Assembly (NCBI RefSeq): GCF_000143415.4
Contig: NW_003314539.1
Coordinates: 1 to 14,525 of the forward strand
Direction of reading: 5' to 3'
From: Selaginella moellendorffii
Lineage: Eukaryota; Plantae; Lycopodiophyta
DNA: 14,525 nt
The notes beneath the pieces were generated by a model. That model saw nothing but the letters and a program-made list of their open reading frames with translations. It made no database searches and was not told where the DNA came from. Both the position numbers and the translations under genes were made by a program. This document shows, piece after piece, positions 1 through 14,525 of this stretch (the stretch's first letter is position 1; each line of letters begins with the position of its first letter).

Positions 1-1185
1 GCTAGTTTCTCACGATGATAAAAAAGAAGTCTCACCTGAGTTTGAAGCGAAATGACAAGAATACAAAAATGATAAAGAAAATCAGCCGAAAAGAATGAAA
101 AATTACTCCATTCCAATCTGAAATCCGCTAGCCCACCATGCCAAAAGGCCTGAGCAACGCCATTCGTTTGTGGCCTAGGGCAAGTGCACTGGATCAAACT
201 GGAATGAAGTGCAGGCAAGCAGAAAAGCAAACAAATATGCATTCAAGAGAAACAATGCGAAACAAAAGTAAAGCAATTTGAAACAGAGACGATCATCAAT
301 GCTGGACACAAAGTAAAAATATGCAATTTGGTTGATTTTTACAATGGTTGCCCATACAGAAGTTATAAATTCCATCAAGGATCTATCACAAAAATGTTGT
401 GGATGCCATATAACTGTAGTGACTTTGAGGCTGAGAAGAAAGTCAATGAGCCACTCCCATACCAACTTAACTCTTTTTTTCCATAAAGGTGGTTATGGAA
501 AAATTAGAAAAAATCTAGAACAAATGCTTTTGAATATGTCTAAACACCTATATTATATTAAGAAAAGCTTAAGAAATTCATAGCTTTAAGTGAAATAATG
601 AAGTGCAAATTATGAATCATGTTCACATAAGAAGGAGCTAAACTATTTACGCATTTCTAAAAGATAATCTCTGTTTATTTATTCTTTTATTTTATTTTAA
701 TTTCTTTAATTTTGGTATAAACCTTACTTGTATAGCTAATAATGGACTGTCATTGATTGCATTATATTGGTGAACCAGAAATATACCTGGATTAAATAAT
801 TGTCAAATTTATTCAAATTTTATTTAAATGTCACAGCTCTATAATCTCTATATTGCTTTAGTTCTTTTATTCTAAAGATAAATACATGCATACATATAAT
901 AATTATAATAATATAATCTCTATAAACAAAAAATGCTAGAACATAGTATAAATAATGGAGTAAAATTATTTATTTTTAGAAATCATAAAAATTGCTACCA
1001 TTTATTGATTTATTTTTTTTATTCTGAAAATAAAGCCATTAGGGTCATCAAAAAATTATTGTGAAGCTGGTTGCTGCAAAGGCGGAGTAGAAATTATCAA
1101 TTTAGTTTTTCCGAAAGTACAAGAAAATCTAACATTAAACTCTAATTTTAAAGACTATCTCAGCAATAATCTGTGCTTCTTCCAG

Positions 1186-1265
1186 CTATAACTTTCGACA
1201 ACACCTGGAACAAGATCCTGGGTGGTAGCAACAAAGTCGCAGGGCCATTCAGCTACGGCACAGGC
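1186..1265 (+). pseudogene. Orphan exon fragment resembling a plant subtilisin-like protease (subtilase)
   Basis: After a pyrimidine-rich acceptor (GTGCTTCTTCCAG|CT) the frame reads (A)ITFDNTWNKILGGSNKVAGPFSYGTG. This resembles the subtilase segment following SAxMTTA (xxxDNT..AxPFxYGxGH). The frame closes at 1308-1310 and no flanking subtilase exons were recognised. Confidence 0.55.
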
Positions 1266-1683
1266 ATTCTGAGCCACTCTCTTTCACACAAGAATCACTT
1301 TATTCCATGACTGGGCTAGCATCTTGGAAGTGCCAGCCCCTCAGGCCTTTGCCTTTGTTCTTTGCCTATCACCTTCTTCACAAAAAAAGAACGCCTCCAA
1401 GAGACATCGATTACATTCGCAGCTGTACAACTGTGATGTCCGAGACATTGAATTTGGCTATCTTTGAGCAACTGAGATGGTTTGGAAGATGCTGCTGCTG
1501 AGTTTCCAGGTGAGCCTCTCTTGTCATTTTCCAGGCAAAATTCTTATCAGTCTTATATCTTTCATCCAGGGACTGTCTAGCTCAAAGTAACGAATATGCT
1601 GGCTATATTCTTGAAAGTGTTTGAAAACTTGGGCGGGAGAGTTTTTAGGGCTCTCGCCTAGCATATTTCGCATGAAAATTTCA

Positions 1684-2145
1684 GCCGAGATCATCGCCGA
1701 GGGCGGCGAGGAACACCTCCTGGTAGATCCGCCTCACTTCTCCCAATCCATCGTCGTAGGCGCAAAACCCCACAGCCAGTAGGGCTCTCGCGACGCTCGC
1801 CGCCACGAGGTCGCTCACGGCTGCCGAATTCGAGCTGCGCAGCACAGATTCATCCAGCCCACAGGCATGGAAGCACGCCGCGAGCAGGGAGGTGTTCGTC
1901 AGCTTGTAACCGCCGTTTACTCCGGCGTGGTGATTGTCATCTAGCTTGACGAGCTCCATCGCCAGGCACAGGTTGAGGCACGCTGCTCCAACGACGCTCA
2001 AGTGATGGTGGCTCGATCCTTTCACTCCCGGAAAGTCGAGAAATGCCGCTATGAGCATCTTGTCCAGAGAGATGCCAGTTCTCATCCCGGGCTTGAGGTA
2101 ACCTTCCTCGGGTGGATAGTCCAAAAGGCGCCGAACTGTTGGAAG
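1684..2145 (-). other. Putative degenerate RNase III-like domain, copy A (out of frame with the upstream gene)
   Basis: Near-identical to 7309-7779 apart from a 3-aa deletion (AGN) and a few substitutions; contained in ORF 1681-2172. Confidence 0.62.
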
Positions 2146-5100
2146 GTACGTCTCTCGCCACACGCTGATCATCTCTCAGTTAAAAAACCTCGTCTGGCAG
2201 CTCCATCGTCCACGCCTCGTCTTTGATCTCGTCCAGCGATGATAAGACTTGGAAAGCTTGCTCCAGGAGGTATTTCCGATTGTCCAGAGGTGGTGGTCTC
2301 GGAGTAGCAGCGACAAAAGCTGGAGAGTAAGAACTTGAAGCGACGACAATGGTGGTCGGTCTCGAGTCTGCTGGAGGTTTGGAAATGCTTGAATCTCTCT
2401 CCAACTGATCTTCCTCCGTTTCAGGAACATCCGGTAGCACAAACGGTTCCATCTCTGCGACTGCTTCACCGCCATGTAAGTTCTTCTCAGCGTCAGCTTT
2501 AGATGGATCCACAATCACCCTGGTCTTTAGAAACGTCTCGTCCTCGCTATAGAGCCGCATGTTGTGCTTGATGAGCATGTTGTCCACCTCCATGACGTCG
2601 AACTTAGAGAATGCCAGCATGCTCAGATGCCTCTCCATGCCTGGAATCAAGTACCGGTGGTGGAAAAGCAGACCCTCCGCTATGATCCTCGCGAACTCGG
2701 TCCCAAACTCTGTGTTCCTCTTCTTCCTTTGCCCCTCGTCGACATAGGCTAGTTCCTGCCTCTCCCTGTTCCAGTAGAGCATCCTCTCCGAGACCGCGTG
2801 ACGTGTAGTGTCTCCAACGCGAAGAGTCCAGTGAACTTTCAGGCTCGTTTCGAGTTCCACCTCCTTTAGACGCAGCAGTTCCTGCACTATGGTTTGTCGC
2901 TCCTTGACGGAGAGTGTTTGTCCCAAACCAGTTTCCTTCCGAGTGAGAGGCTCATGCAGCTCGTGTTCGTCTCCGATTCAGCACATTCGGAGATTGTCTT
3001 GACCCCCAGCCAGGAGTAGACTTTATATAGCTCCTGCGTGTTGATCTCCTGGCTGGCTGGATACCACGCCACCCACGGACGAGGATTAGTGTTTCCAAAG
3101 AGACGTTCCAGCTCTAGCTGATCAACCATGACCGTCTTTGCAGGCGGAAGAAGCTTGACGGTGGCTGCGTTCTTTTCGCAGGCTGGTATTGAAGGAACGC
3201 AGCTGCTCGCGCGGAAAGCTTTCAGATACAGCGTCGAAGTTGGTCGTGACGAGACTAGTTTCGCCTCCACCAGCTCACGCCACACTGTGTAAGCCTTTTG
3301 TACCTCGACATCTTTTCCCTTAGAAGACCACCTCTGCCAGAGCTCGCAGAACTTGGTGATCGAAGGCTTCTCACAAACATGAAACCTCTTCTGAAGGATG
3401 TCTTGCATGACCCGCTTGTAGCAGCTATCCAGAGGTACAACACCGATTTCTCCAAACAAGCCCTCAACGTCGTGAATGACGCATTCTTCCTTTATCTTCC
3501 AGGTTGCTGCACGGCCTTCGCTCTGCGGCACCCAGATCACGCCAATGTCCCTCCATAATTCTTGTTCAGCGCAGCGGGAGAGGTACTGATAAAATCTGAC
3601 CACTTTAGCCGTGTCGACTTCCTGAGCAGGAAGCTTCTGCATATTGCCGAGACAGCGGAGGACAGTTGCATATCCCATGCCGGGCTCGCAAGCCACTCCC
3701 AGGCTTCGGAACTCGTTCTTATACTCCTCCAATGGCATCCAGTCCTTGTCCACGAACGGAACGTCCTCGACTTTCAAGACTTTAAGCAGCTCAGGCACCG
3801 GCAGGAATGCAACGGTTGGGCAGCAGTATCCGTGGCTCGTCTTCAACCACTTGGTATTCTTAATACTGGAAGCGAAAGCGGGTGCATTGCAGTGCCTGGA
3901 TTTAATCCACTTCAGTAACAACGAGCTCGCTGCGACGTTACCAACATAATGCGGAGGAAGGGCCTCGTTCACCGGATCAAAGGCGGGGATGTCCGTAGCC
4001 AGGAACTGCTCCTTCAGAAAATTCACAAACTCGGTTCGCACGTCGGGGTCGGAGAGATCGACCGTTGCTGACTCCATATACTCTTCTGACAATTTTCGAA
4101 CGCCGCGTCTCCACACATCAGACGGGAGCAAGAGCGGCCACTTCGCTCCACAAGCCGCCGGTAGCAACAATGGACGCGTTGAAACATAACTCGCACCATA
4201 AGGACTCACAGCTCCGTCATTCTCGACGATTGGTACATTACGCTTTTGGTTGCTGATGGATGTGTACGAGCTGCGGTCGTTTCTGTACAGGTCGAACAGG
4301 AAGTGCATCGCTAGAACAGCAAGCTTTGCATCTGAGGAGTTCGCAGTGACTGCTCGAAGAACCTGACGAGCGAGTGAGCATGCTGTCAGTTCGCTCACGC
4401 TGAAGGGGGTTCTCTCCAACCAGTTCTCTAACACCGAGTGCTGCCGGATTTTTGCAGCGCAGGCCGATGGAACGAAGTTGAAAGTTAGCCAACGTTGAAA
4501 CACCTCTGTCCAACCAGCGAGCCAAGCGGTAGCTCTATGACCAGAATCCCAGTATATGGATCTGCCATCGTTTCGCGCGAGATCATCCATGCTTGCCAAC
4601 TGAAGTCGACCATCGGAGCCTCGATACTTGAGAAACTTGAGGGATCTCAAAGTTGACGACTTGGAGGACAGGAACACCAGCAGCTTGACATATGCATCGT
4701 CGGGGAGCGATCTCATCCAGTCTTCAGAGTCGAGGCTTTGGTGATATTCATCGTTGCTCATATCTGGGACTCCCAGGAGTCTCAGCACCGAGACGTAGCT
4801 CTCCTGCAGCGTGCTGTCCACTATGTACGAGGGACTTCCTCGCAAGAACCTGGGACACTTCGGTGCGGCTTTGAGGAGCTCTCGGAAGCTGGGGGCGATT
4901 TTTCTCGCAAGAGCAGGCTTGCAAAGCTGCCCGCTCGGTGGTGCACGGCCGACGTCCGAGGCGCAAAGAATGACGTTGTTGTCCTTCAGCTTGGACAAGA
5001 TATCGTTGCGGACTCTCTCGAGGTACGAGTTACGGCAAACATTCACAGGTACGTACTTGTACATTGCCATGCGTGCTACTGACGGTATACTCTGCAGTCC

Positions 5101-5858
5101 AAACGCCGTGGTGTTGAGGAGAAGCTCGAAGGCGTTGTAGAAAACCTCGGGAACACAGCGAAAGATCCCCTGGTTCCAGGGGCTGTCAAAGAGGAGCGTC
5201 TCACGGGAGGAAACGAGCAAAAAGTCCGAGTTGATAAGAAACGGCAGGCCCGAGTGGATATCGGAAGGCAGGAACGAGAAGATATCGCCAATGCTGCAGC
5301 TGCTCGAGATACGATCATCCACCGGAAAGGCTAGAGTGATCGTCCAGCTATCGACATCTTTTCGGTTTTCAACCTTGGCCTCCTCAGGTACTTTCAAAGT
5401 CTGCTTAAACATGTAGTAGTTGCTGTGCTGAGTGCCATTCCGTCCGTTACTAGCTGTGAGAAAAGTTGTGCTCGTTTCCACGCTTTCATTCTTTGACGTT
5501 GTCATCTCCACAGATCTGGAGAGAACCAGTTCCGTGGGAGGCCGCGACTGCTGATCGTAGATGGAGAGCATGCGTATCTTCGATAGGAAGAGGAGCGTCT
5601 CCGCTGGGATTTGAGTAAGCTGCTTTGCCACCTCCGAAATCTTTTCCTGACGCAAGGGAAGGATGATCACCGTTGCAGGAAGCTCGGCCTTGCTACAGAC
5701 CTTCTGCAGCACAGCGTCTGTAGGACGGTCGACCCATTCCGGGACAATATACCCGAGCTTGGCCTCGTTGTGGGGCTCTTCGTCGAAACGAATACGAAAG
5801 CCATTGCTGATTATATATGGCTGCTTGGTGACGAGAAAAACGCTCTTAAACCCAATTC

Positions 5859-5911
5859 CTGTACGAGCAAGAGACGTTACCACGGCTAGAGAGGGAGAGG
5901 TAAGAACTCAC
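5859..5911 (-). other. Intron 2 of copy A (53 nt, phase 1)
   Basis: AAAG|GTGAGT...GTACAG|GA. Removing it rejoins GYIGEKG-IGFKSVF exactly. Confidence 0.92.
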
Positions 5912-6122
5912 CTTTCTCGCCAATGTATCCTTGAGACTTCTTTCCTTTCTTTGTGGACTGACCAGAGCCGCACAAGGACTCTATATTCGTTTCCTAGAAA
6001 CCAACTTCGTTGTTCAAGAGCAGCAGCGTGGCAGCTGCTCCAGTGCCAGTGACGTCGGTCTTTGTGAGATAGATTTCGATGCTCGGCTCCACGGACGAAT
6101 GGTAAGTGTTGTCCTCAGCGTT

Positions 6123-6171
6123 CTAAGACGCTCATGTTTGTCAGGGACAGAACCAAGTTCGAGCAAAGTAC
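6123..6171 (-). other. Intron 1 of copy A (49 nt, phase 0)
   Basis: CAG|GTACTT...TCTTAG|AAC. Removing it rejoins the GHKL N-box ELVQ-NAEDN exactly. Confidence 0.92.
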
Positions 6172-6786
6172 CTGGACGAGTTCGGACAGGAAATGGATGT
6201 CCTTCTGGTAGAGCTCGGCCGAGAGGAGCCTGATCGTCTCCTGGAGCATGGGAGCGAGAGGATTGGGACCGGACTGGCCGATTCCAAAGAGCTCGCGACG
6301 CAAGCGCTCGATAAACATTCGCTGGGACGACATTTCGCTGTGCAGAAATGTGTCTAATGGATTGCATTATATTGGTGAACCAGAAATATGCCTGGATTAA
6401 ATAATTGTCAAATTTATTCAAATTTTATTTAAATGTCACAGCTCTATAATCTCTATATTGCTTTAGTTTTTTTATTCTAAAGATAAATGCATACATATAA
6501 TAATTATAATAATATAATCTCTATAAACAGAAATGCTGATTGTAGACTAGAACATAATGGAGTAAACATTTATTTTTAGAAATCATAAAAATTGCTACCA
6601 TTTATTGCTTTAGTTTTTTATTCTGAAAATAACAAGCTATTAGGGTCATCAAAAAATTATTGTGAAGCTGGTTGCTGCAAAGGCGGAGTAGAAATTATCA
6701 ATTTAGTTTTTCCGAAAGTACAAGAAAATCTAACATTAAACTCTAATTTTAAAGACTATCTCAGCAATAATCTGTGCTTCTTCCAG

Positions 6787-6866
6787 CTATAACTTTCGAC
6801 AACACCTGGAACAAGATCCTGGGTGGTAGCAACAAAGTCGCAGGGCCATTCAGCTACGGCACAGGC
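6787..6866 (+). pseudogene. Second copy of the subtilase-like exon fragment
   Basis: Identical to 1186-1265 (offset 5601). Confidence 0.55.
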
Positions 6867-7305
6867 ATTCTGAGCCACTCTCTTTCACACAAGAATCACT
6901 TTATTCCATGACCGGGCTAGCATCTTGGAAGTGCCAGCCCCTCAGGCCTTTGCCTTTGTTCTTTGCCTATCACCTTCTTCACAAAAATGAACGCCTCTAA
7001 GAGACATCGATTACATTCGCAACTGTACAACTGCAATGTCTGCGACATTGAATTTGGCTATCTTTGAGCAACTGAGATGGTTTGGAAGATGCTGGAACTG
7101 TGTATCAGGCTGCTGAGTTTCCAGGTGAGCCTCTCTCGTCATTTGATCCAGGCAAAATTCTTATCAGTCTTATATCTTTCATCCAGGGATCAAAGTAACG
7201 AATATGCTGGCTATATTCCTAGAAAGTATTTGAAAACTTGGGCGGGAGAGTTTTTAGGGCTCTTGATACAAAACCGGTGAGCCTAGCATATTTCGCATGA
7301 AAATT

Positions 7306-8640
7306 TCAGCCGAGAGCATCGCCGAGGGCGGCGAGGAACACCTCCTGGTAGATCCGCCTCACTTCTCCCAATCCATCGCCGTAGGCGCAAAACCCCACAG
7401 CCAGTAGGGCTCTTGCGACGCTCACCGCCACGAGGTCGCTCACGGCTGCCGAATTCGAGCTGCGCAGCACAGATTCATCCAGCCCACAGGCATGGAAGCA
7501 TGCCGCGAGCAGGGAGGTGTTCGTCAGCTTGTAAGCGCCGTTTACTCCGCTGTGGTGATTGTCATCTAGCTTGACGAGCTCCATCGCCAGGCACAGGTTG
7601 AGGCACGCTGCTCCAACGACGCTCAAGTGATGGTGGCTCGATCCTTTCACTCCCGGAAAGTTTCCAGCGTCGAGAAATGCCGCTGTGAGCATCTTGTCTA
7701 GAGACATGCCAGTCCTCATCCCGGGCTTGAGGTAACCTTCCTCGGGTGGATAGTCCAAAAGGCGACGAACTGTTGGAAGGTACGTCTCTCGCCACACGCT
7801 GATCTTCTCTGAGTTAAAAAACTCGTCTGGCAGCTCCATCGTCCACGCCTCGTCTTTGATCTCGTCCAGCGATGACAAGACTTGGAAAGCTTGCTCCAGG
7901 AGGTATTTCCGATTGTCCAGAGGTGGTGGTCTCGGAGTAGCAGCGACAAAAGCTGGAGAGTAAGAACTTGAAGCGACGACAATGGTGGTCGATCTCGAGT
8001 CTGCTGGAGGTTTGGAAATGCTTGAATCTCTCTCCAACTGATCTTCCTCCGTTTCAGGAACATCCAGTAGCACAAACGGTTCCATCTCTGCGACTGCTTC
8101 ACCACCATGTAAGTTCTTCTCAGCGTCAGCTTTAGATGGATCCACAATCACCCCGGTCTTTAGAAACGTCTCGTCCTCGCTATAGAGCCGCATGTTGTGC
8201 TTGATGAGCATGTTGTCCACCTCCATGACGTCGAACTTAGAGAATGCCAGCATGCTCAGATGCCTCTCCATGCCTGGAATCAAGTACCGGTGGTGGAAAA
8301 GCAGACCCTCCGCTATGATCCTCGCGAACTCGGTCCCAAACTCTGTGTTCCTCTTCTTCCTTTGCCTTTCGTCGACATAGGCTAGTTCCTGCCTCTCTCT
8401 GTTCCAGTAGAGCATCCTCTCCGAGACCGCGTGGCGCGTAGTGTCTCCAATGCGAAGAGTCCAATGAACTTTCAGGCCCGTTTCGAGTTCCACCTCCTTT
8501 AGACGCAGCAGTTCCTGCACTATGGTTTGTCGCTCCTTGATGGAGAGTGATAGAGCCAGATACCCGAGTATTGCTCTAAACAGTCCCAGGTGGATGTATC
8601 CTTCGTCCCAAACCAGTTTCCTTCCGAGTGAGAGGCTCAT
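7306..8640 (-). CDS. Uninterrupted 444-aa C-terminal reading frame of copy B (end of the At3g48770-like region + linker + RNase III-like domain); expression unknown
   Basis: Open from the ATG at 8640-8638, which lies inside the TSD, to TGA at 7306-7308. It retains the GLFRAILGYLA segment that copy A has lost. It is a fragment of the larger gene, not shown to be an independent gene. Confidence 0.4.
   Translation of the reverse strand: MSLSLGRKLVWDEGYIHLGLFRAILGYLALSLSIKERQTIVQELLRLKEVELETGLKVHWTLRIGDTTRHAVSERMLYWNRERQELAYVDERQRKKRNTEFGTEFARIIAEGLLFHHRYLIPGMERHLSMLAFSKFDVMEVDNMLIKHNMRLYSEDETFLKTGVIVDPSKADAEKNLHGGEAVAEMEPFVLLDVPETEEDQLERDSSISKPPADSRSTTIVVASSSYSPAFVAATPRPPPLDNRKYLLEQAFQVLSSLDEIKDEAWTMELPDEFFNSEKISVWRETYLPTVRRLLDYPPEEGYLKPGMRTGMSLDKMLTAAFLDAGNFPGVKGSSHHHLSVVGAACLNLCLAMELVKLDDNHHSGVNGAYKLTNTSLLAACFHACGLDESVLRSSNSAAVSDLVAVSVARALLAVGFCAYGDGLGEVRRIYQEVFLAALGDALG
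7309..7779 (-). other. Putative degenerate (non-catalytic) RNase III-like domain, copy B
   Basis: Five blocks match the RNase III consensus in order and spacing: TVRRLLDY (LxxxLGY), MLTAAFLDAG (LLxxALTHxS), HHHLSVVGAACLNLCLAMELVK (NERLEFLGDAVLxLxVSxxLF), LTNTSLLAACFHACGLDESV (LVxxxxLAxxAxxLGLxxxL), AVSVARALLAVGF..DGLGEVRRIYQEVF (LADxFEALIGAIYLDxGxxxAxxFIxxxF). Alignment by eye only. Confidence 0.65.
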
Positions 8641-8645
8641 GCAGC
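8638..8645. repeat. Left target-site duplication CATGCAGC
   Basis: Identical to 11570-11577; 8 bp is the hAT-typical length. Confidence 0.97.
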
Positions 8646-8661
8646 CAGTGCTTCAAAACAC
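8646..8661 (+). repeat. Left TIR CAGTGCTTCAAAACAC
   Basis: 14/16 match to the reverse complement of 11554-11569 (CATAGCTTCAAAACAC), with mismatches at positions 3-4. Confidence 0.93.
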
Positions 8662-8811
8662 GCCGTGCACCATGGCGCGTTGGCGTGGTGACACGAACAC
8701 GGCCACGAGCCATGTTAACACGGGCCGTGTTCATTGACTCGGTCAATGCTCCAAAACACGGCTCCAAACACAGTTGAAACACGGTCAAATACCGTGTGAC
8801 CACACCGTGTT
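8657..8811. repeat. Left subterminal repeats (AACACGG / CCGTGTT, both orientations)
   Basis: About nine ACACG/CGTGT cores in ~155 nt, analogous to the subterminal transposase-binding motifs of other hAT elements. Confidence 0.8.
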
Positions 8812-9089
8812 CTAAAACAATAGTTCATGTGGTTCACATGAGCGTTTTGCGCTTTGATGTTTTTCTTGTCTTGTGATCAATCAAAAATTCCTGCGATCAA
8901 TCAAAAGGTTTTTCCAGCGATCTATGGTGATTTTCTTGGGCTAAGAATGCCCTCTCTAGGATTCTAGCGCTAGAGTGGGAGGAATGGCACTCAGCCACGC
9001 CTGATTTCGCTGCAAAAAATTCTTGATCATTGTCTCCAGGTTTGTAGATTTTTTCTCCCAAATTTTCTCTTTGGATTGCTTTTGCCATA

Positions 9090-9153
9090 ATTCTTAGTTG
9101 CTTGGCACTGCATCTTTGTAGATTGCTGTGATTCTTAGTTGCTTGGCATTGCA
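9090..9153. repeat. 23-nt direct repeat in the transposon 5' region
   Basis: ATTCTTAGTTGCTTGGCACTGCA at 9090-9112 and ATTCTTAGTTGCTTGGCATTGCA at 9131-9153 (one mismatch). Confidence 0.8.
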
Positions 9154-9224
9154 ATTGTGTTATTAACGGTGTGATTCTAAAATTTTGAGTTTTTCAAAAT
9201 TTTTTTAGGCACAGGGTGTGACCG

Positions 9225-9372
9225 ATTGTGGATTGGAACAGGAGCAGGGTGTGGGATTTTAGAGGCTGAGCAATTGTGGATTGGAGCAGTAGCAGGGTGT
9301 GGGATTTTAGAGGTTGGACTGAGTGATTATGGATTGGAGTAGAAGCAAGTGCAGGATTTTAGAGGTTGAGCT
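9225..9372. repeat. Three-copy ~48-53-nt minisatellite just upstream of the transposase ATG
   Basis: Units start at 9225, 9273 and 9326 with consensus ATTGTGGATTGGAGCAG-AGCAGGGTGTGGGATTTTAGAGG. Confidence 0.85.
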
Positions 9373-9377
9373 AAGTG

Positions 9378-11441
9378 ATGGCATCTGGGAGCCAGAGCAG
9401 GAGGACTTCAACAGGGCGACATCCATCATCCGTTTGGTGGGAAGAAGTGATCCTTGGTGATTAAACAAACTGCCGTAGTGGGCATCGACGCTGGTCTTGC
9501 AAGTGGTGTTCGTTGAGAGACAAAGTTTCAAGTGTGGATCGTGTGAGGGGACATCTCACAAGGGAAGCTGGTCATGAAATCTTAAGTTGTGATGTCATCT
9601 CAGCAGAGAAGAGACAACAGCTTAGGGAGATGGCTAAAACCATTGACGACCAGGTTTTGGCTGGAAAACACCAAAGCAAGAAACGAGCAGTTTCTACATG
9701 TGTCGAAGGCATCCAAAGCACTGGAGGAGAGAGTTTTGTTGCTTCCCAGAGTTCTACACCAGGTGGCAATTCTGTAGAAGGAATTTCCAGGTTTTTTTCG
9801 CAACGACAGCAGGGAATCCGGGATTCTTTTGATCCAAAAAGGAAGGAAGCAGTGGATATGGCTATAGGACGATTTTTCTGGAATGAGCACATACCATTTG
9901 TGAAAGCTCGTTCTCACCATTTCAAGGAAATGGTGCAGCAGATTGTAAGGCATGGAATTCCCTACAATCTTCCAACAGAGACAGCATTGCGAGAGGAATT
10001 ATTGCAAGTGGAGAAAGCCAATCTTGAAGTTCAATTTGCCAAGGTGAAGGCACATTGGAAGAATTGTGGGGTTACTCTTGTTGCTGATGCATGGAATGAC
10101 ACAAGAAATTGACATATCATGGGGCTTGTTGCATACAGCAGAGGACAGTCGACTTTTCTCGAGGCCATTGATATATCTTCTAGTGGGAAGACGGCTGATA
10201 ACGTTTTTGCGACATGGGAGCGAGGTATCAAGATTGTTGGAGAGGAGAATGTTGTTCTTATTGTCACGGATGGTGAGGCTTCAAACAAGGCTGCTGCTAG
10301 GCTTCTAGAGGCGAGGAAGCCAAGGATTATGTGGGCTCCGTGCTTAGCTCATTGTTTGAACAACATTCTCAAGGATTTCGCAAAACTACCATGGATGGTT
10401 GGGCTGCTAGACAAGGGAAAGACTCTGGTTGGCTTCCTTCGGAACCATTCGCATCTAGTAGCGATTTTGGCATCCTTCTCTTCACGATGAGTGTTGAAGT
10501 TCAGCGAAACACGATTCGCCTTCAACTTTCTTATGATGGAGAGATTGGTGGAGTTGAGGCCAAAGCTACAACAAATGTTTGTGAGCGACACTTACAATGC
10601 AAGGCTAGAGTCAAGGACAGATTTTGGGATAGCATGCCGAGGAATTGTGTTCAATGATACATACTGGAACGAGGTTAACCACATGCTGGGTGTTTCAAGG
10701 AGGGTGATGTATTTGCTACAAATGGTTGACGGAGACATGCCTGTGATTGGGAAGGTCTACAAGGGGATGGATCAGATGAGTGAGAACATCCGTCAACAAG
10801 AGGAGAACAATCTTTAGTATGAGGAGCTAAACCAACTGATTTCAAACAGGTGGTGGGCTTATCATAGCACCTTTCACTCCGTGGCATACACGCTTGATCT
10901 AGAGTTTCAGGGGCGAGGACAAGAAAAATCCAGGGAAGTTTCCAAAGATTGGAACATGTACTTGGAGATCCAGTTCCCTGACTATCAGCAAAGGTCAACT
11001 ATAAAAAATCAGCTTTGCCAATACAGGAACTTGGAGGGTAGTTTTGGCACCGGGGACTCTCAGATGGATTGTACAACAAAGGGTTCTGTGCAGTGGTGGG
11101 AGGACAATGGCTACTCAGGTCTAGATTTGTAGAGGTTGGCAATTCGAGTGCTTAGTCAGGCGAGTTCTTCCTCATCTGTGGAGCGATTGTTCAACATTTT
11201 TGGGCACATCACTTCAAAGAAGAGGAATTGCTTAGCAGTGAGCCAGATTGCAGACTTGGTATTTGTGGCCAGTAATACCAAGTTGATAGGGAGCCACACT
11301 TCCTATGACAAGTTTGTGGGATTGAGCCAAACAGGAAGTATTCCTCAAATTACTGATGCTGATATTGAAGTTATGGAAGAAGAGGACGAAGACAAAGATG
11401 ATGATCCTACTAATGAGGAGCTTCTAGATGAGATGGAGTGA
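9378..11441 (+). pseudogene. hAT transposase, single 688-codon frame with five premature stops
   Basis: ORFs 9513, 10119, 10491, 10881 and 11136 share one frame that extends back to the ATG at 9378 (MASGSQSRR). Motifs: BED finger (VWWEEV..WSCKWC..RGHL..C), TLVADAW, IVTDGEASN, WAPCLAHCLN (CxxH), ETRFA, RW..FHSVAYTLD, WW, LAIRVLSQASSSSSVERLF, KKRN, and an acidic tail. Stops at 9462 (TAA), 10110 (TGA), 10488 (TGA), 10815 (TAG), 11130 (TAG). Confidence 0.95.
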
Positions 11442-11465
11442 TAAGTAGAATAATTTAGAGAATAT

Positions 11466-11560
11466 TTGTGTTTTCACCCGTGTTTATCCGTGTTCATTTC
11501 TGTGTTCCGTGTTTGTGTTCAAAAAATTGAATGCCGTGTTCGTGTTTGTGTTTGTGTTTT
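11466..11560. repeat. Right subterminal repeats (CCGTGTT / TGTGTT, one orientation)
   Basis: About five CGTGTT copies plus several TGTGTT variants in ~95 nt. Confidence 0.8.
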
Positions 11561-11569
11561 GAAGCTATG
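11554..11569 (-). repeat. Right TIR (reverse complement CATAGCTTCAAAACAC)
   Basis: GTGTTTTGAAGCTATG immediately precedes the right TSD. Confidence 0.93.
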
Positions 11570-11577
11570 CATGCAGC
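11570..11577. repeat. Right target-site duplication CATGCAGC
   Basis: Identical to 8638-8645; host gene sequence resumes directly afterwards. Confidence 0.97.
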
Positions 11578-14525
11578 TTGCGTCCGTCTCCGATTCAGCA
11601 CATTCGGAGATTGTCTTCACCCCCAGCCAGGAGTAGACTTCATATACTTCCTGCGTGTTGATCTCCTGGCTGGTTGGATACCACGCCACCCATGGACGAG
11701 GATTAGTGTTTCCAAAGAGATGTTCCAGCTCTAGCTGATCAACCATGACCGTCTTTGCAGGCGGAAGAAGCTTGACGGTGGCTGCGTTCTTTTCGCAGGC
11801 TGGTATTGAAGGAACGCAGCTGCTCGCGCAGAAAACTTTCAGATACGGCGTCGAAGTTGGTCGTGACGAGACCAGCTTCGCCTCCACCAGCTCACGCCAC
11901 ACTGTGTAAGCCTTTTGTACCTCGACATCTTTGCCTTTAGACGACCACCTCGCAGAACTTGATGATCGAAGGCTTCTCACAAACATGAAACCTCTTCTGA
12001 AGGATGTCTTGCATGACCCGCTCGTAGCAGCTATCCAGGGGTACAACACCGAGTTCTTCAAACAAGCCCTCAACGTCGTGAATGACGCATTCTTCCTTTT
12101 TCTTCCAGGTTGCTGCACGGCCTTCGCTCTGCAGCACCCAGATCGTGTCAACGTCCCTCCATAATTCTTGTTCAGCACAGCGGGAGAGGTACTGATAAAA
12201 TCTGACCACTTTAGCCGTGTCGACTTGCCGAGCAGGAAGCTTCTACATATTGCCGAGACAGCGGAGGACAGTTGCATATCCCATGCCGGGCTCGCAAGCC
12301 ACTCCCAGGCTTCGGAACTCGTTCTTATACTCCTCCAATGGCATCCAGTCCTTGTCCACGAACAGAACATCCTCGACTTTCAAGACCTTAAGCAGCTCAG
12401 GCACCGGCAGGAATGCAACGGTTGGGCAGCCGTATCCGTGGCTCGTCTTCAACCACTTGGTAGTCTTAATACTGGAAGTGAAAGCGGGTGCATTGCAGTG
12501 CCGGGATTTAATCCACTTCAGTAACAACGAGCTCGCTGCGACGTTACCAACATGATGCGGAGGAAGGGCCTCGTTCACCGGACCAAAGGCGGGGATGTCC
12601 GTAGCCAGAAACCTCCTTCAGAAAATTCACAAACTCGGTTCGCACGTCGGAGTCGGAGAGATCGACCGTTGCTGACTCCATATACTCTTCTGACAATTTT
12701 CGAACGCCGCGTCTCCACACGTCAGACGGGAGCAAGAGCGGCCACTTCGCTCCACAAGCCGCCGGTAGCAACAATGGACGCGTTGAAACATAACTCGCAA
12801 CATAGGGACTCACGGCTCCGTCATTCTCGACGATTGGTACATTACGCTTTTCGTTGCTGATAGATGTGTACGAGCTGCGGTCGTTTCTGTACAGGTCGAA
12901 CAGGAAGTGCATCGCTAGAACAGCAAGCTTTGCATTTGAGGAGTTCGCAGTGACTGCTCCAAGAACCTGACGAGCGAGTGAGCATGCTGTCAGTTCGCTC
13001 ACGCTGAAGGGGGTTCTCTCCAACCAGTTCTCTAACACCGAGTGCTGCCGGATTTTTGCAGCGCAGGCCGATGGAACGAAGTTGAAAGTTAGCCAACGTT
13101 GAAACACCTCTGTCCAACCAGCGAGCCAAGCGGTAGCTCTGTGACCAGAATCCCAGTACATGGATCTGCCATCGTTTCGCGCGAGATCATCCATGCTTGC
13201 CAACTGGAGTCGACCATCGGAGCCTCGATACTTGAGAAACTTGAGGGATCTCAAAGTTGACGACTTGGAGGACAGGAACACCAGCAGCTTGACATATGCA
13301 TCGTCGGGGAGCGATCTCATCCAGTCTTCAGAGTCGAGGCTTTGGTGATATTCATCGTTGCTCATATCTGGGAGTCCCAGGAGTCTCAGCACCGAGCCGT
13401 AGTTCTCCTGCAGCGTGCTGTCCACTATGTACGAGGGACTTCCTCGCAAGAACCTGGGACACTTCGGTGCGGCTTTGAGGAGCTCTCGGAAGCTGGGGGC
13501 GATTTTTCTCGCAAGAGCAGGCTTGCAAAGCTGCCCGCTCGGTGGTGCACGGCCGACGTCCGAGGCGCAAAGAATGACGTTGTTGTCCTTCAGCTTGGAC
13601 AAGATATCGTTGCGGACTCTCTCGAGGTACGAGTTGCGGCAAACATTCACAGGTACGTACTTGTACATTGCCATGCGTGCTACTGACAGTATACTCTGCA
13701 GTCCAAACGCCGTGGTGTTGAGGAGAAGCTCGAAGGCGTTGTAGAAAACCTCGGGAACACAGCGAAAGATCCCCTGGTTCCAGGAGCTGTCAAAGAGGAG
13801 CGTCGCACGGGAGGAAACGAGCAAAAAGTCCGAGTTGATAAGAAACGGCAGGCCCGAGTGGATATCGGAAGGCAGGAACGAGAAGATATCGCCAATGCTG
13901 CAGCTGCTCGAGATACGATCATCCACCGGAAAGGCTAGAGTGATCATCCAGCTATCGACATCTTTTCGCTTTTCAACCTTGGCCTCCTCAGGTACTTTCA
14001 AAGTCTGCTTAAACATGTAGTAGTTGCTGTGCTGAGTGCCATTCCGTCCGTTACTAGCTGTGAGAAAAGTTGTGCTCGTTTCCACGCTTCCATTCTTTGA
14101 CGTTGTCATCTCCACAGATCTGGAGAGAACCAGTTCCGTGGGAGGCCGCGACTGCTGATCGTAGATGGAGAGCATGCGTATCTTCGATAGGAAGAGGAGC
14201 GTCTCCGCTGGGATTTGAGTAAGCTGCTTTGCCACCTCCGAAATCTTTTCCTGACGTAAGGGAAGGATGATCACCGTTGCAGGAAGACCACCTTGCTACA
14301 GACCTTCTGCAGCACAGCGTCTGTAGGACAGTCGACCCATTCCGGGACAATATACCCGAGCTTGGCCTCGTTGTGGGGCTCTTCGTTGAAACGAATACGA
14401 AAGCCATTGTGATTATATACGGCTGCTGGTGACGAGAAAAACGCTCTTAACCCAATTCTATCGCCAGGCGGTGGAGACAGCACGTTTCCCCCGCACTGCC
14501 GTCTCCGGGGCGTTTTTTCGTTATT

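What the first reader, a model, noticed from the sequence alone, without database searches (positions are those of the whole stretch)
7309..7779. Sacsin/NOV-type GHKL ATPase fused to a catalytically dead RNase III-like domain
Seen: after HNMRLYSEDETFL the frame continues without an intron through an acidic, Ser/Pro-rich linker (PETEEDQLERD..ATPRPPP) into a ~155-aa hydrophobic domain; both copies have it. Recalled knowledge: angiosperm At3g48770-like proteins end shortly after the N-L/M-x-x-F/Y-x-EDExFL motif, and NOV-type proteins end in DUF3883. Inference: five blocks follow RNase III order and spacing. The signature NERLEFLGD reads HHHLSVVGA (7609-7635) and ADxxEALIG reads VSVARALLA, so the equivalents of E. 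coli E41, D45, D114 and E117 are S, A, S and R. The 'LS..G' and 'RA' substitutions recall the non-catalytic plant RNase III-like protein NFD2. I know of no described GHKL ATPase + pseudo-RNase III architecture. It could couple an Hsp90-like ATPase to dsRNA binding, to dimerisation, or act as a decoy for RNase III/Dicer-targeting factors; these roles are speculative.
Basis: partly seen in the sequence, partly recalled or inferred. Interest (0 to 1): 0.85.

Follow-up and report, generated by a model that had tools for sequence, protein, structure and literature searches.

The report
Dead RNase III on sacsin-like ATPase
A clubmoss (Selaginella) gene family joins a sacsin/Tiamat-type ATPase to a C-terminal RNase III domain that has lost every catalytic residue yet is still conserved and transcribed; a relative in another plant keeps the active enzyme, and the two copies in this window are themselves broken pseudogenes.

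Summary
The window is a whole 14.5-kb Selaginella moellendorffii scaffold with two tandem minus-strand copies of a sacsin/Tiamat-like GHKL ATPase gene.

- **Homology.** After the EDETFL motif and a 108-aa acidic linker, both copies encode a ~175-aa domain. Pfam misses it, but it is homologous (E 1e-11 library-wide) to the C-terminus of one 1902-aa plant protein, which is a canonical RNase III domain (Pfam E 8e-19).
- **Fold.** An AlphaFold model (pLDDT 81) matches only RNase III folds (Z up to 15.6).
- **Catalytic residues.** The equivalents of E. coli E38, E41, D45, D114 and E117 are H, S, A, S and R.
- **State of the copies.** Both window copies are pseudogenes. Copy 1 has a nonsense codon and two frameshifts. 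Copy 2 has frameshifts and a hAT transposon.
- **Intact paralog.** LOC112349098 carries the same dead domain in one exon, is covered by spliced RNA contigs across the linker, and shows dN/dS of about 0.06 in this domain.
- **Distribution.** None of about 100 seed-plant homologs has the domain.

It fits the known theme of Tiamat-like ATPases swapping C-terminal dimeric nucleases, but RNase III is not in the published catalogue. This is a new variant of a known kind. First readers of the scan also flagged it on two other pieces of this genome.

The parts
7309..7836 (-). Copy 2: catalytically dead RNase III-fold domain (176 aa, from ELPDEFF to the last residue; stop codon at 7306-7308). Catalytic-equivalent codons: E38->H 7632-7630, E41->S 7623-7621, D45->A 7611-7609, D114->S 7422-7420, E117->R 7413-7411.
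7837..8160 (-). Copy 2: 108-aa acidic Ser/Pro-rich linker between the EDETFL motif (8178-8161) and the RNase III-like domain. It is in frame and has no intron.
   Evidence: RNA contigs of the paralog cross the equivalent stretch without a joint.
8161..8645 (-). Copy 2: end of the sacsin-like solenoid and beta-sheet region, up to the transposon insertion point. It contains the 52-bp segment (8550-8601) that copy 1 has lost.
8646..11569 (+). hAT-family transposon of about 2.9 kb inserted into copy 2. It has an 8-bp target-site duplication CATGCAGC (8638-8645 and 11570-11577), terminal inverted repeats, and a fragmented transposase (DUF659 plus the hAT dimerisation domain).
11570..14458 (-). Copy 2: upstream part of exon 3 (ATPase G-box and solenoid), broken by six frameshifting deletions of 1, 1, 1, 1, 2 and 11 bp relative to copy 1 and to the intact paralog.
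1684..2203 (-). Copy 1: the same dead RNase III-like domain (HHHLSVVGA 2010-1984, ASVARALLA 1800-1774). It is separated from the linker by a 1-bp insertion in a T-run at about 2183-2189.
2204..5858 (-). Copy 1: rest of exon 3 (G-box GIGFKSVF, solenoid, EDETFL at 2545-2528, linker), with a 52-bp deletion at 2916/2917 that shifts the frame.
5912..6333 (-). Copy 1: exon 1 (6333-6172), intron 1 (6171-6123) and exon 2 (6122-5912). Exon 2 carries the GHKL N-box (LVQNAEDN) and an in-frame TAG at 5996-5994 where the paralogs have Ser. Intron 2 is 5911-5859.
   Evidence: The spliced contig ends at 5860.

Best explanation
**What it is**
The flagged stretch encodes the C-terminal domain of a lycophyte branch of the single-repeat sacsin/Tiamat-like GHKL ATPases. 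In this branch the usual C-terminal end has been extended by an RNase III nuclease domain of the bacterial (class 1) type, without a dsRBD.

- One relative, P0002 from an unidentified plant, keeps the full catalytic signature. It is tethered by a low-complexity linker of about 500 aa.
- In Selaginella moellendorffii all five acidic active-site residues are replaced (H, S, A, S, R). The domain cannot carry out canonical two-metal dsRNA cleavage.
- The domain is nevertheless kept under purifying selection and is transcribed on one mRNA with the ATPase.
- The two copies in this window are dead duplicates of that gene. The working representative is LOC112349098 on scaffold GL377566.1.

**How it most likely works (inferred, not shown)**
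RNase III domains are obligate dimers. The best-conserved element here is the hydrophobic signature helix that forms the dimer interface. I therefore think the dead domain serves as the constitutive C-terminal dimerisation module, and probably also binds dsRNA, in an ATP-driven GHL clamp. That is the role proposed for the dimeric PD-(D/E)xK nuclease of Tiamat/NOV. The ancestral, P0002-like form would cut dsRNA. The Selaginella form would bind, sense or scaffold without cutting.
For: **Homology**
- The window domain matches the P0002 C-terminus at E 9.9e-12 library-wide and 1e-23 pairwise.
- P0002 residues 1746-1861 match Pfam Ribonuclease_3 (8e-19), TIGR02191 (4e-26) and Drosha, bacterial RNase III and Dicer chains in PDB.
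- The family profile hits PDB RNase III and Dicer sequences almost exclusively. hhalign without P0002 gives E 3.5e-4 in the same register. ESM features also point to RNase III clusters.

**Fold**
- The AF2 model has pLDDT 80.9.
- All top 50 Foldseek hits are RNase III folds.
- VIA-align gives Z 15.6, rmsd 2.6 A over 137 of 144 residues of C. jejuni RNase III.

**Dead site**
- Shown by the alignments.

**One gene**
- L002 has three exons, and the last is a single 1423-codon ORF spanning G-box to domain.
- P0002 is one 5709-bp ORF with the same two intron positions and an intact N-box.

**Expression**
- Contigs from three studies are spliced over intron 2 and tile 1656-5860 with no joint in the linker. 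They carry the intact paralog's indels.

**Constraint**
- L002 against the second L003 copy gives 11 synonymous and 2 nonsynonymous changes in the domain. That is dN/dS 0.06, p 9e-6 against neutrality, compared with 0.56 in the sacsin part and 0.95 in the linker.

**Family context**
- P0007 matches PADLOC TmtA at 1e-96.
- Preprint 10.64898/2026.09.30.754977 describes Tiamat-like proteins that swap a dimerising, linker-tethered C-terminal nuclease for other, often catalytically dead, effectors.

**Pseudogene status of the window copies**
-.
Against: - Pfam, NCBIfam and direct PDB sequence searches with the Selaginella domain alone find nothing. The direct profile comparison has only 37% hhalign probability.
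- The good AF2 model was built from an alignment that already contained RNase III sequences, so the fold match is not independent of the homology. The shallow-alignment model was poor (pLDDT 47).
- Dimerisation and RNA binding were not tested.
- The family looks unstable in this genome. Of five copies seen, only one is fully intact; L003's second copy has a stop at nt 24000.
- The dN/dS estimate rests on 13 substitutions.
- The runs are only inferred to be RNA, from splicing. Contigs cannot show transcript ends or levels.
- The source organism of P0002 is unknown, and it is a single Logan contig.
Confidence: 0.85

Rival explanations
1. The dead domain acts as a heterodimerising partner or decoy for an active RNase III protein (an RTL or DCL) or for factors that target them, rather than as a homodimerisation or RNA-binding module of its own ATPase.
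For: RNase III domains do function as heterodimers or pseudo-dimers with inactive partners. Dead RNase III folds such as the mitoribosomal mL44-type proteins and RTL4 are among the structural matches. The signature-helix hydrophobic face is retained.
Against: There is no partner evidence. The active homolog P0002 has a single RNase III domain, which implies homodimerisation in the ancestral state. The Tiamat model predicts homodimeric C-terminal domains.
Confidence: 0.15
2. The domain is a functionless relic. The whole Selaginella family is decaying, and loss of the catalytic residues is simply part of pseudogenisation.
For: Four of the five copies examined carry stops, frameshifts or a transposon. 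dN/dS between the two window copies is 0.3-0.6, which is compatible with relaxed constraint.
Against: All five copies share the same five active-site replacements, so these predate the duplications. The domain is about 32-36% identical to P0002, at least as conserved as the sacsin part at 30%. dN/dS is 0.06 between L002 and L003 copy 2. The domain ORF is open in every copy. The intact gene is transcribed and spliced.
Confidence: 0.08
3. The domain is still a nuclease that uses a rebuilt, histidine-based site (SSHHHLS and DDNHH), not the canonical acidic residues.
For: There are unusual His clusters at and near the former metal site. The Tiamat preprint notes that nuclease folds lacking canonical residues can remain active, citing PacI.
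Against: There is no precedent for an RNase III fold active without the acidic quartet. E117 is replaced by Arg, which would repel a metal ion. This is purely speculative.
Confidence: 0.04
4. The similarity to RNase III is spurious, and the domain is an unrelated helical domain.
For: There is no direct Pfam or PDB sequence hit with the Selaginella sequence alone. Helical folds can give high Z-scores by chance (note).
Against: The match to a bona fide RNase III domain is co-linear over the full domain at E 1e-11, sits at the same position in an orthologous gene, and is in the same register in four independent alignments.
Confidence: 0.02

Closest known systems
Tiamat (TmtA) / NO VEIN / 'Tiamat-like' sacsin-repeat GHKL ATPases
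   Same: It has an N-terminal SACS-type GHKL ATPase with an intact N-box in the intact paralog, followed by a long solenoid region. A disordered linker then tethers a C-terminal nuclease-fold domain of a kind that dimerises. PADLOC TmtA matches at E 1e-96 over residues 4-691 of P0007. Published surveys describe effector swapping and catalytically dead nuclease folds in this family.
   Different: The C-terminal domain is RNase III, a dsRNA nuclease fold, instead of the PD-(D/E)xK NOV_C domain (PF13020 is absent). RNase III is not among the listed effector types I-XI.
Arabidopsis AT3G48770-type single-repeat sacsin-like proteins
   Same: These are the closest named seed-plant homologs of the ATPase-solenoid part (E about 1e-120). 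They share the NxxL/FxEDExFL terminal motif.
   Different: Seed-plant members end about 8 aa after that motif and carry an N-terminal BED zinc finger. The lycophyte proteins lack BED and add a linker plus RNase III.
Class 1 / Mini-III-like RNase III nuclease domains (bacterial Rnc, Drosha and Dicer RIIID)
   Same: The fold is the same (Z 13-15.6). The signature helix G-x-A-C-L and the overall block order are conserved. P0002 is 33-39% identical to bacterial RNase III.
   Different: In Selaginella, E38, E41, D45, D114 and E117 are replaced. There is no dsRBD. The domain is appended to a protein of about 1350 aa.
Human sacsin HEPN domain
   Same: A sacsin-repeat ATPase ends in a dimeric RNase-fold domain that is catalytically intact in some lineages and degenerate in others (PMC3710099).
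   Different: HEPN and RNase III are unrelated folds. Sacsin has three repeats plus a J domain.
NFD2/RTL4 and mitoribosomal mL44-type inactive RNase III-like proteins
   Same: Both are RNase III folds. The structural match to RTL4 (9h4a) is Z 15.3.
   Different: No sequence-level relationship was detected. 9h4a is absent from the sequence hits. Those are stand-alone proteins, not ATPase fusions.

Membership tests
RNase III domain (PF00636/PF14622) | Significant sequence match to the family profile | tested here: inconclusive
   The direct Pfam and NCBIfam scans of the window domain give no hit. The transitive link is strong: E 1e-11 to P0002, whose domain scores 8e-19 in Pfam. The family profile against PDB RNase III gives 4.9e-5, and hhalign gives 3.5e-4.
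RNase III domain (PF00636/PF14622) | All-helical RNase III endonuclease fold | tested here: met
   The AF2 model has pLDDT 80.9. The top 50 Foldseek hits are all RNase III folds. Z is 15.6, rmsd 2.6 A, with 137 residues aligned. Caveat: the alignment used for modelling contained RNase III sequences.
RNase III domain (PF00636/PF14622) | Signature ERLEFLGD and the acidic catalytic residues (E38, E41, D45, D114, E117, E. coli numbering) | tested here: not met
   The window reads HHLSVVGA and S..R at these positions in all five Selaginella copies. P0002 has them intact (QRLEFLGD, DVFEA).
RNase III domain (PF00636/PF14622) | Homodimerisation and dsRNA binding or cleavage | not testable with these tools
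   No multimer prediction or assay was available. Only conservation of the hydrophobic signature helix was seen.
Sacsin/Tiamat-like GHKL ATPase | SACS-type ATPase domain with N-box and G-box | tested here: met
   P0007 matches NCBIfam P_loop_sacsin at 2e-17, above the cut-off, and TmtA at 1e-96. In the window, exon 2 reads LVQNAEDN and exon 3 reads GIGFKSVF. The gene is broken there, however, and Pfam SACS scores fall below the cut-off.
Tiamat / NO VEIN sensu stricto | C-terminal PD-(D/E)xK NOV_C nuclease (PF13020) | tested here: not met
   There is no PF13020 hit in the window ORFs, P0001 or P0002, nor in the precomputed list for P0007. It is therefore 'Tiamat-like', not Tiamat.
AT3G48770-type proteins | N-terminal BED zinc finger and an end shortly after the EDExFL motif | tested here: not met
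   No BED domain is listed for P0007 or P0001. The tail after the motif is 256-280 aa, against a median of 8 aa.
NFD2/RTL4 | Specific sequence relationship to RTL4 | tested here: not met
   9h4a is not among the sequence hits of the family profile (E<=1) or of the P0002 domain (E<=0.001). Only fold similarity was found.
hAT transposon (the insertion in copy 2) | 8-bp target-site duplication, short terminal inverted repeats, hAT dimerisation domain | tested here: met
   The duplication CATGCAGC flanks 8646-11569. The inverted repeats begin CAGTGCTTCAAAACAC and CATAGCTTCAAAACAC. PF05699 scores 1e-5 and DUF659 scores 3e-23.

The most novel reading that the evidence does not exclude
Lycophytes carry a dsRNA-directed branch of the Tiamat/NOV immune ATPase family. 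In it, an ATP-operated clamp is coupled to an RNase III effector that is active in the P0002 lineage. The S. moellendorffii version would be a nuclease-dead derivative that senses or sequesters dsRNA, for example viral replication intermediates or transposon hairpins, instead of cutting it. This would be a plant antiviral or anti-transposon sensor-effector type that is independent of Dicer.
Probability: 0.25. Interest if true: 0.8.

Novelty: new variant of a known kind. Interest (0 to 1): 0.6.

Why it matters
Two 2026 preprints recast NO VEIN, Tiamat and sacsin proteins as an ancient, modular immune ATPase family whose C-terminal dimeric nuclease is often swapped. None of the listed effectors is RNase III. 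This locus adds a dsRNA-specific nuclease to that repertoire.

It also supplies a natural active/dead pair: P0002 against the Selaginella proteins. That pair makes the question of what the C-terminal module does beyond cutting directly testable. It parallels the active/degenerate HEPN domain of animal sacsin.

There are also annotation errors to flag:
- SELMODRAFT_432374 and SELMODRAFT_411714 are gene models that hide frameshifts behind invented introns.
- SELMODRAFT_411714 is in addition fused to homoserine dehydrogenase.

Tried and rejected
- **Direct family searches.** Pfam, NCBIfam and PDB sequence searches with the Selaginella domain alone found nothing. A first AF2 run with a 5-sequence alignment was too poor to use (pLDDT 47.5).
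- **Search for more fusions.**
  - The P0002 RNase III region against proteins of 1046-3328 aa returned only itself and two Dicers.
  - The P0002 sacsin part returned 101 homologs, none with PF00636. None gave a phmmer match to the RNase III domain even at E 10.
- **Identifying P0002's organism.** Neighbouring genes have no named relatives at 90% identity. The run accession appears in no paper. The neighbour is only a generic plant F-box/kelch protein. The organism remains unknown.
- **Rejected: the frame breaks in copy 1 are introns, as in gene model P0001.** The 52 nt missing at 2916/2917 are coding sequence in copy 2, in P0007 and in P0002. RNA contigs contain them.
- **Rejected: L003's second copy is intact.** It has an in-frame stop.
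- **Rejected: a specific NFD2 relationship**.
- **Earlier findings.** A look-up by place gave nothing. A look-up by words gave only two first-reader titles from other pieces of the same genome.
Full report
**What the window is**

The window is the whole of a 14,525-bp scaffold of Selaginella moellendorffii. Its annotated protein is EFJ04480.1 / SELMODRAFT_432374, named 'Sacsin' by UniRef.

A self-comparison shows two tandem minus-strand copies of one gene:
- Copy 1 spans about 6355 to 1656.
- Copy 2 spans 14458-11570 plus 8645-7306.

Copy 2 is split by a 2.9-kb insertion at 8646-11569. The insertion has:
- an 8-bp target-site duplication (CATGCAGC);
- terminal inverted repeats;
- fragmented ORFs that match DUF659 and the hAT dimerisation domain.

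It is therefore a degenerate hAT transposon.

**Check of the observation**

The ORF 7306..8640 reads through HNMRLYSEDETFL and a 108-aa acidic linker, then a terminal domain, exactly as described. HHHLSVVGA is at 7635-7609 and VSVARALLA at 7425-7399. Copy 1 has the same domain at 1681..2172.

In 59 homologs the protein ends a median of 8 aa after the EDExFL motif. The Selaginella proteins run on for 256-280 aa.

**Is it an RNase III domain?**

Searches with the Selaginella sequence alone find nothing in Pfam, NCBIfam or PDB sequences. ESM Atlas features gave RNase III-like clusters at 0.89-0.90, which is only a lead.

The decisive result came from an exhaustive phmmer search of 1.84 billion representatives. 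It returned the scaffold's own gene model, a spurious repeat-protein hit, and one real relative. That relative is P0002 (1902 aa, E 9.9e-12), aligned over residues 29-206 of the query with P0002 residues 1696-1878.

That part of P0002 is a canonical RNase III domain:
- Pfam Ribonuclease_3, E 8e-19;
- TIGR02191, E 4e-26;
- best PDB matches Drosha, M. tuberculosis RNase III and DCL4;
- 33-39% identity to bacterial RNase III genes.

Its signature QRLEFLGD and DVFEA are intact.

The pairwise alignment (E 1e-23) places the Selaginella HHLSVVGA under QRLEFLGD, and SVARA under DVFEA. A 35-sequence alignment with bacterial enzymes gives the same register. In E. coli numbering the replacements are E38->H, E41->S, D45->A, D114->S and E117->R. 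The conserved EG motif is also lost.

Further sequence support:
- A profile of the family hits almost only RNase III and Dicer chains in the PDB, the best at 4.9e-5.
- A Selaginella-only profile against a bacterial-only profile gives hhalign E 3.5e-4 over 109 columns in the same register.

Structural support:
- With the deeper alignment, AlphaFold2 gives pLDDT 80.9 and pTM 0.81.
- All 50 best Foldseek matches are RNase III folds.
- VIA-align gives Z 15.6 and rmsd 2.6 A over 137 of 144 residues of the C. jejuni nuclease domain. It gives Z 15.3 to Arabidopsis RTL4.
- The model is not independent of the homology, because the alignment contained RNase III sequences.

**Is the fusion real?**

The rest of P0002 is a sacsin-like protein that is co-linear with the Selaginella proteins (30% identity over about 1200 residues, E 3e-143). 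It is encoded by one 5709-bp ORF on an 18.6-kb contig. Upstream lie two small exons that carry the N-box (EILQNAEDN). Their intron positions are identical to those of Selaginella.

In S. moellendorffii, P0007 (LOC112349098, 1539 aa) is an intact paralog. Locus L002 shows three exons. The third is a single ORF of 1423 codons that runs from GIGFKSVF to the end of the dead RNase III domain.

Contigs from four runs were laid on copy 1. In three of them, each from a different study, contigs end at 5860 and continue with exon 2 sequence. They therefore skip intron 2 and are RNA. They tile 1656-5860 with no joint in the linker.

These contigs also carry the indels of the intact paralog:
- a 9-bp insertion at 2034;
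- one base fewer at 2182;
- 52 extra letters at 2916;
- a 21-bp insertion at 4829.

So the fused mRNA exists. These contigs come from the intact gene, not from the window copies.

**State of the window copies**

Copy 1 carries three lesions:
- an in-frame TAG at 5996-5994 in exon 2;
- a 52-bp deletion at 2916/2917, where the missing segment is coding in copy 2, P0007 and P0002;
- a 1-bp insertion in a T-run at about 2183-2189.

Copy 2 has six frameshifting deletions in its upstream part, plus the hAT insertion. Both are pseudogenes.

The gene model P0001 hides copy 1's lesions behind invented introns. P0006 is a similar model that is also fused to homoserine dehydrogenase. Locus L003 holds a near-identical version of copy 1 and another copy with a stop at nt 24000.

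**Is the dead domain functional?**

All five copies share the same active-site replacements, so inactivation predates the duplications.

Between L002 and the second L003 copy, the domain has 11 synonymous and 2 nonsynonymous differences. That is dN/dS 0.06, p 9e-6 against neutrality. The sacsin part gives 0.56 and the linker 0.95. Other pairs give 0.2-0.5.

The domain is also about as conserved against P0002 (32-36%) as the ATPase-solenoid part (30%). The linker is not conserved at all. This argues for a retained, non-catalytic function. The substitution counts are small, however.

**Mechanism (inference)**

P0007 matches the PADLOC Tiamat model at 1e-96.

Preprint 10.64898/2026.09.30.754977 proposes that Tiamat is a GHL clamp. 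In its model the linker-tethered C-terminal nuclease dimerises and replaces a dedicated dimerisation domain. The preprint also reports that this nuclease is frequently swapped for other effectors, several of them lacking catalytic residues.

Preprint 10.64898/2026.09.30.755639 notes that sacsin-repeat proteins carry variable nucleic-acid domains. PMC3710099 notes that the sacsin HEPN domain is active in some animals and degenerate in humans.

RNase III domains are obligate dimers. The best-kept element here is the hydrophobic signature helix (L, G, A, C invariant). I therefore take the domain to be the constitutive dimerisation module of such a clamp, and probably also a dsRNA-binding module. 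It would be cutting in the P0002 lineage and non-cutting in S. moellendorffii.

The rivals are in the rival list: a heterodimer or decoy, a relic, a rebuilt His site, and a spurious match.

**Novelty**

None of 101 plant homologs other than P0002 has an RNase III domain. RNase III is not among the effector types listed in the Tiamat survey. Literature searches found no description of it.

This is a new variant within a known, modular family. First readers of the scan flagged the same architecture on two other pieces of this genome.

Noticed in passing
window 8646-11569: A degenerate hAT transposon is inserted in copy 2. It has the 8-bp target duplication CATGCAGC, terminal inverted repeats, and a frameshifted transposase (DUF659 plus the hAT dimerisation domain). 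An internal ~50-bp tandem repeat lies around 9219-9401, and the + strand is strongly G-rich in skew.
   Followed up: partly
window 7306-8640 (-): The 444-codon ORF of copy 2 starts at an internal Met codon immediately next to the transposon end. A truncated product (end of the solenoid, linker and dead RNase III domain), driven from the transposon edge, is conceivable but was not tested.
   Followed up: no
window 5994-5996, 2916/2917 and about 2183-2189; public models EFJ04480.1 and SELMODRAFT_411714: The public gene models bridge a nonsense codon and two frameshifts with invented introns. SELMODRAFT_411714 is also fused to the upstream homoserine dehydrogenase gene. Both are annotation artefacts.
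   Followed up: yes
L003 10001-25403 (GL377581.1) and L002 (GL377566.1): The gene sits downstream of homoserine dehydrogenase at both other loci. L003 holds two [homoserine dehydrogenase - sacsin-like] units in tandem. Its first unit is 99.6% identical to window 1-3308. Its second has an in-frame stop at nt 24000 (K->*). The window may be an alternative haplotype or assembly of part of L003.
   Followed up: partly
L001 9003-15351 (Logan contig of run SRR33208241): This unidentified plant carries the active-RNase III version. It has three exons, introns of 88 and 128 bp, and a Ser/Gly/Lys-rich linker of about 500 aa. The neighbouring gene is an F-box/kelch protein.
   Followed up: partly
window 1-1000 and about 6400-6900: AT-rich (about 30% GC) 3' flanks are duplicated together with the gene and diverge mostly by small indels. 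No feature was identified in them.
   Followed up: no
L002, equivalent to window position 4829: The intact paralog has a 21-bp in-frame insertion (SPWFLRR) relative to both window copies. It is seen in RNA contigs of two runs.
   Followed up: no
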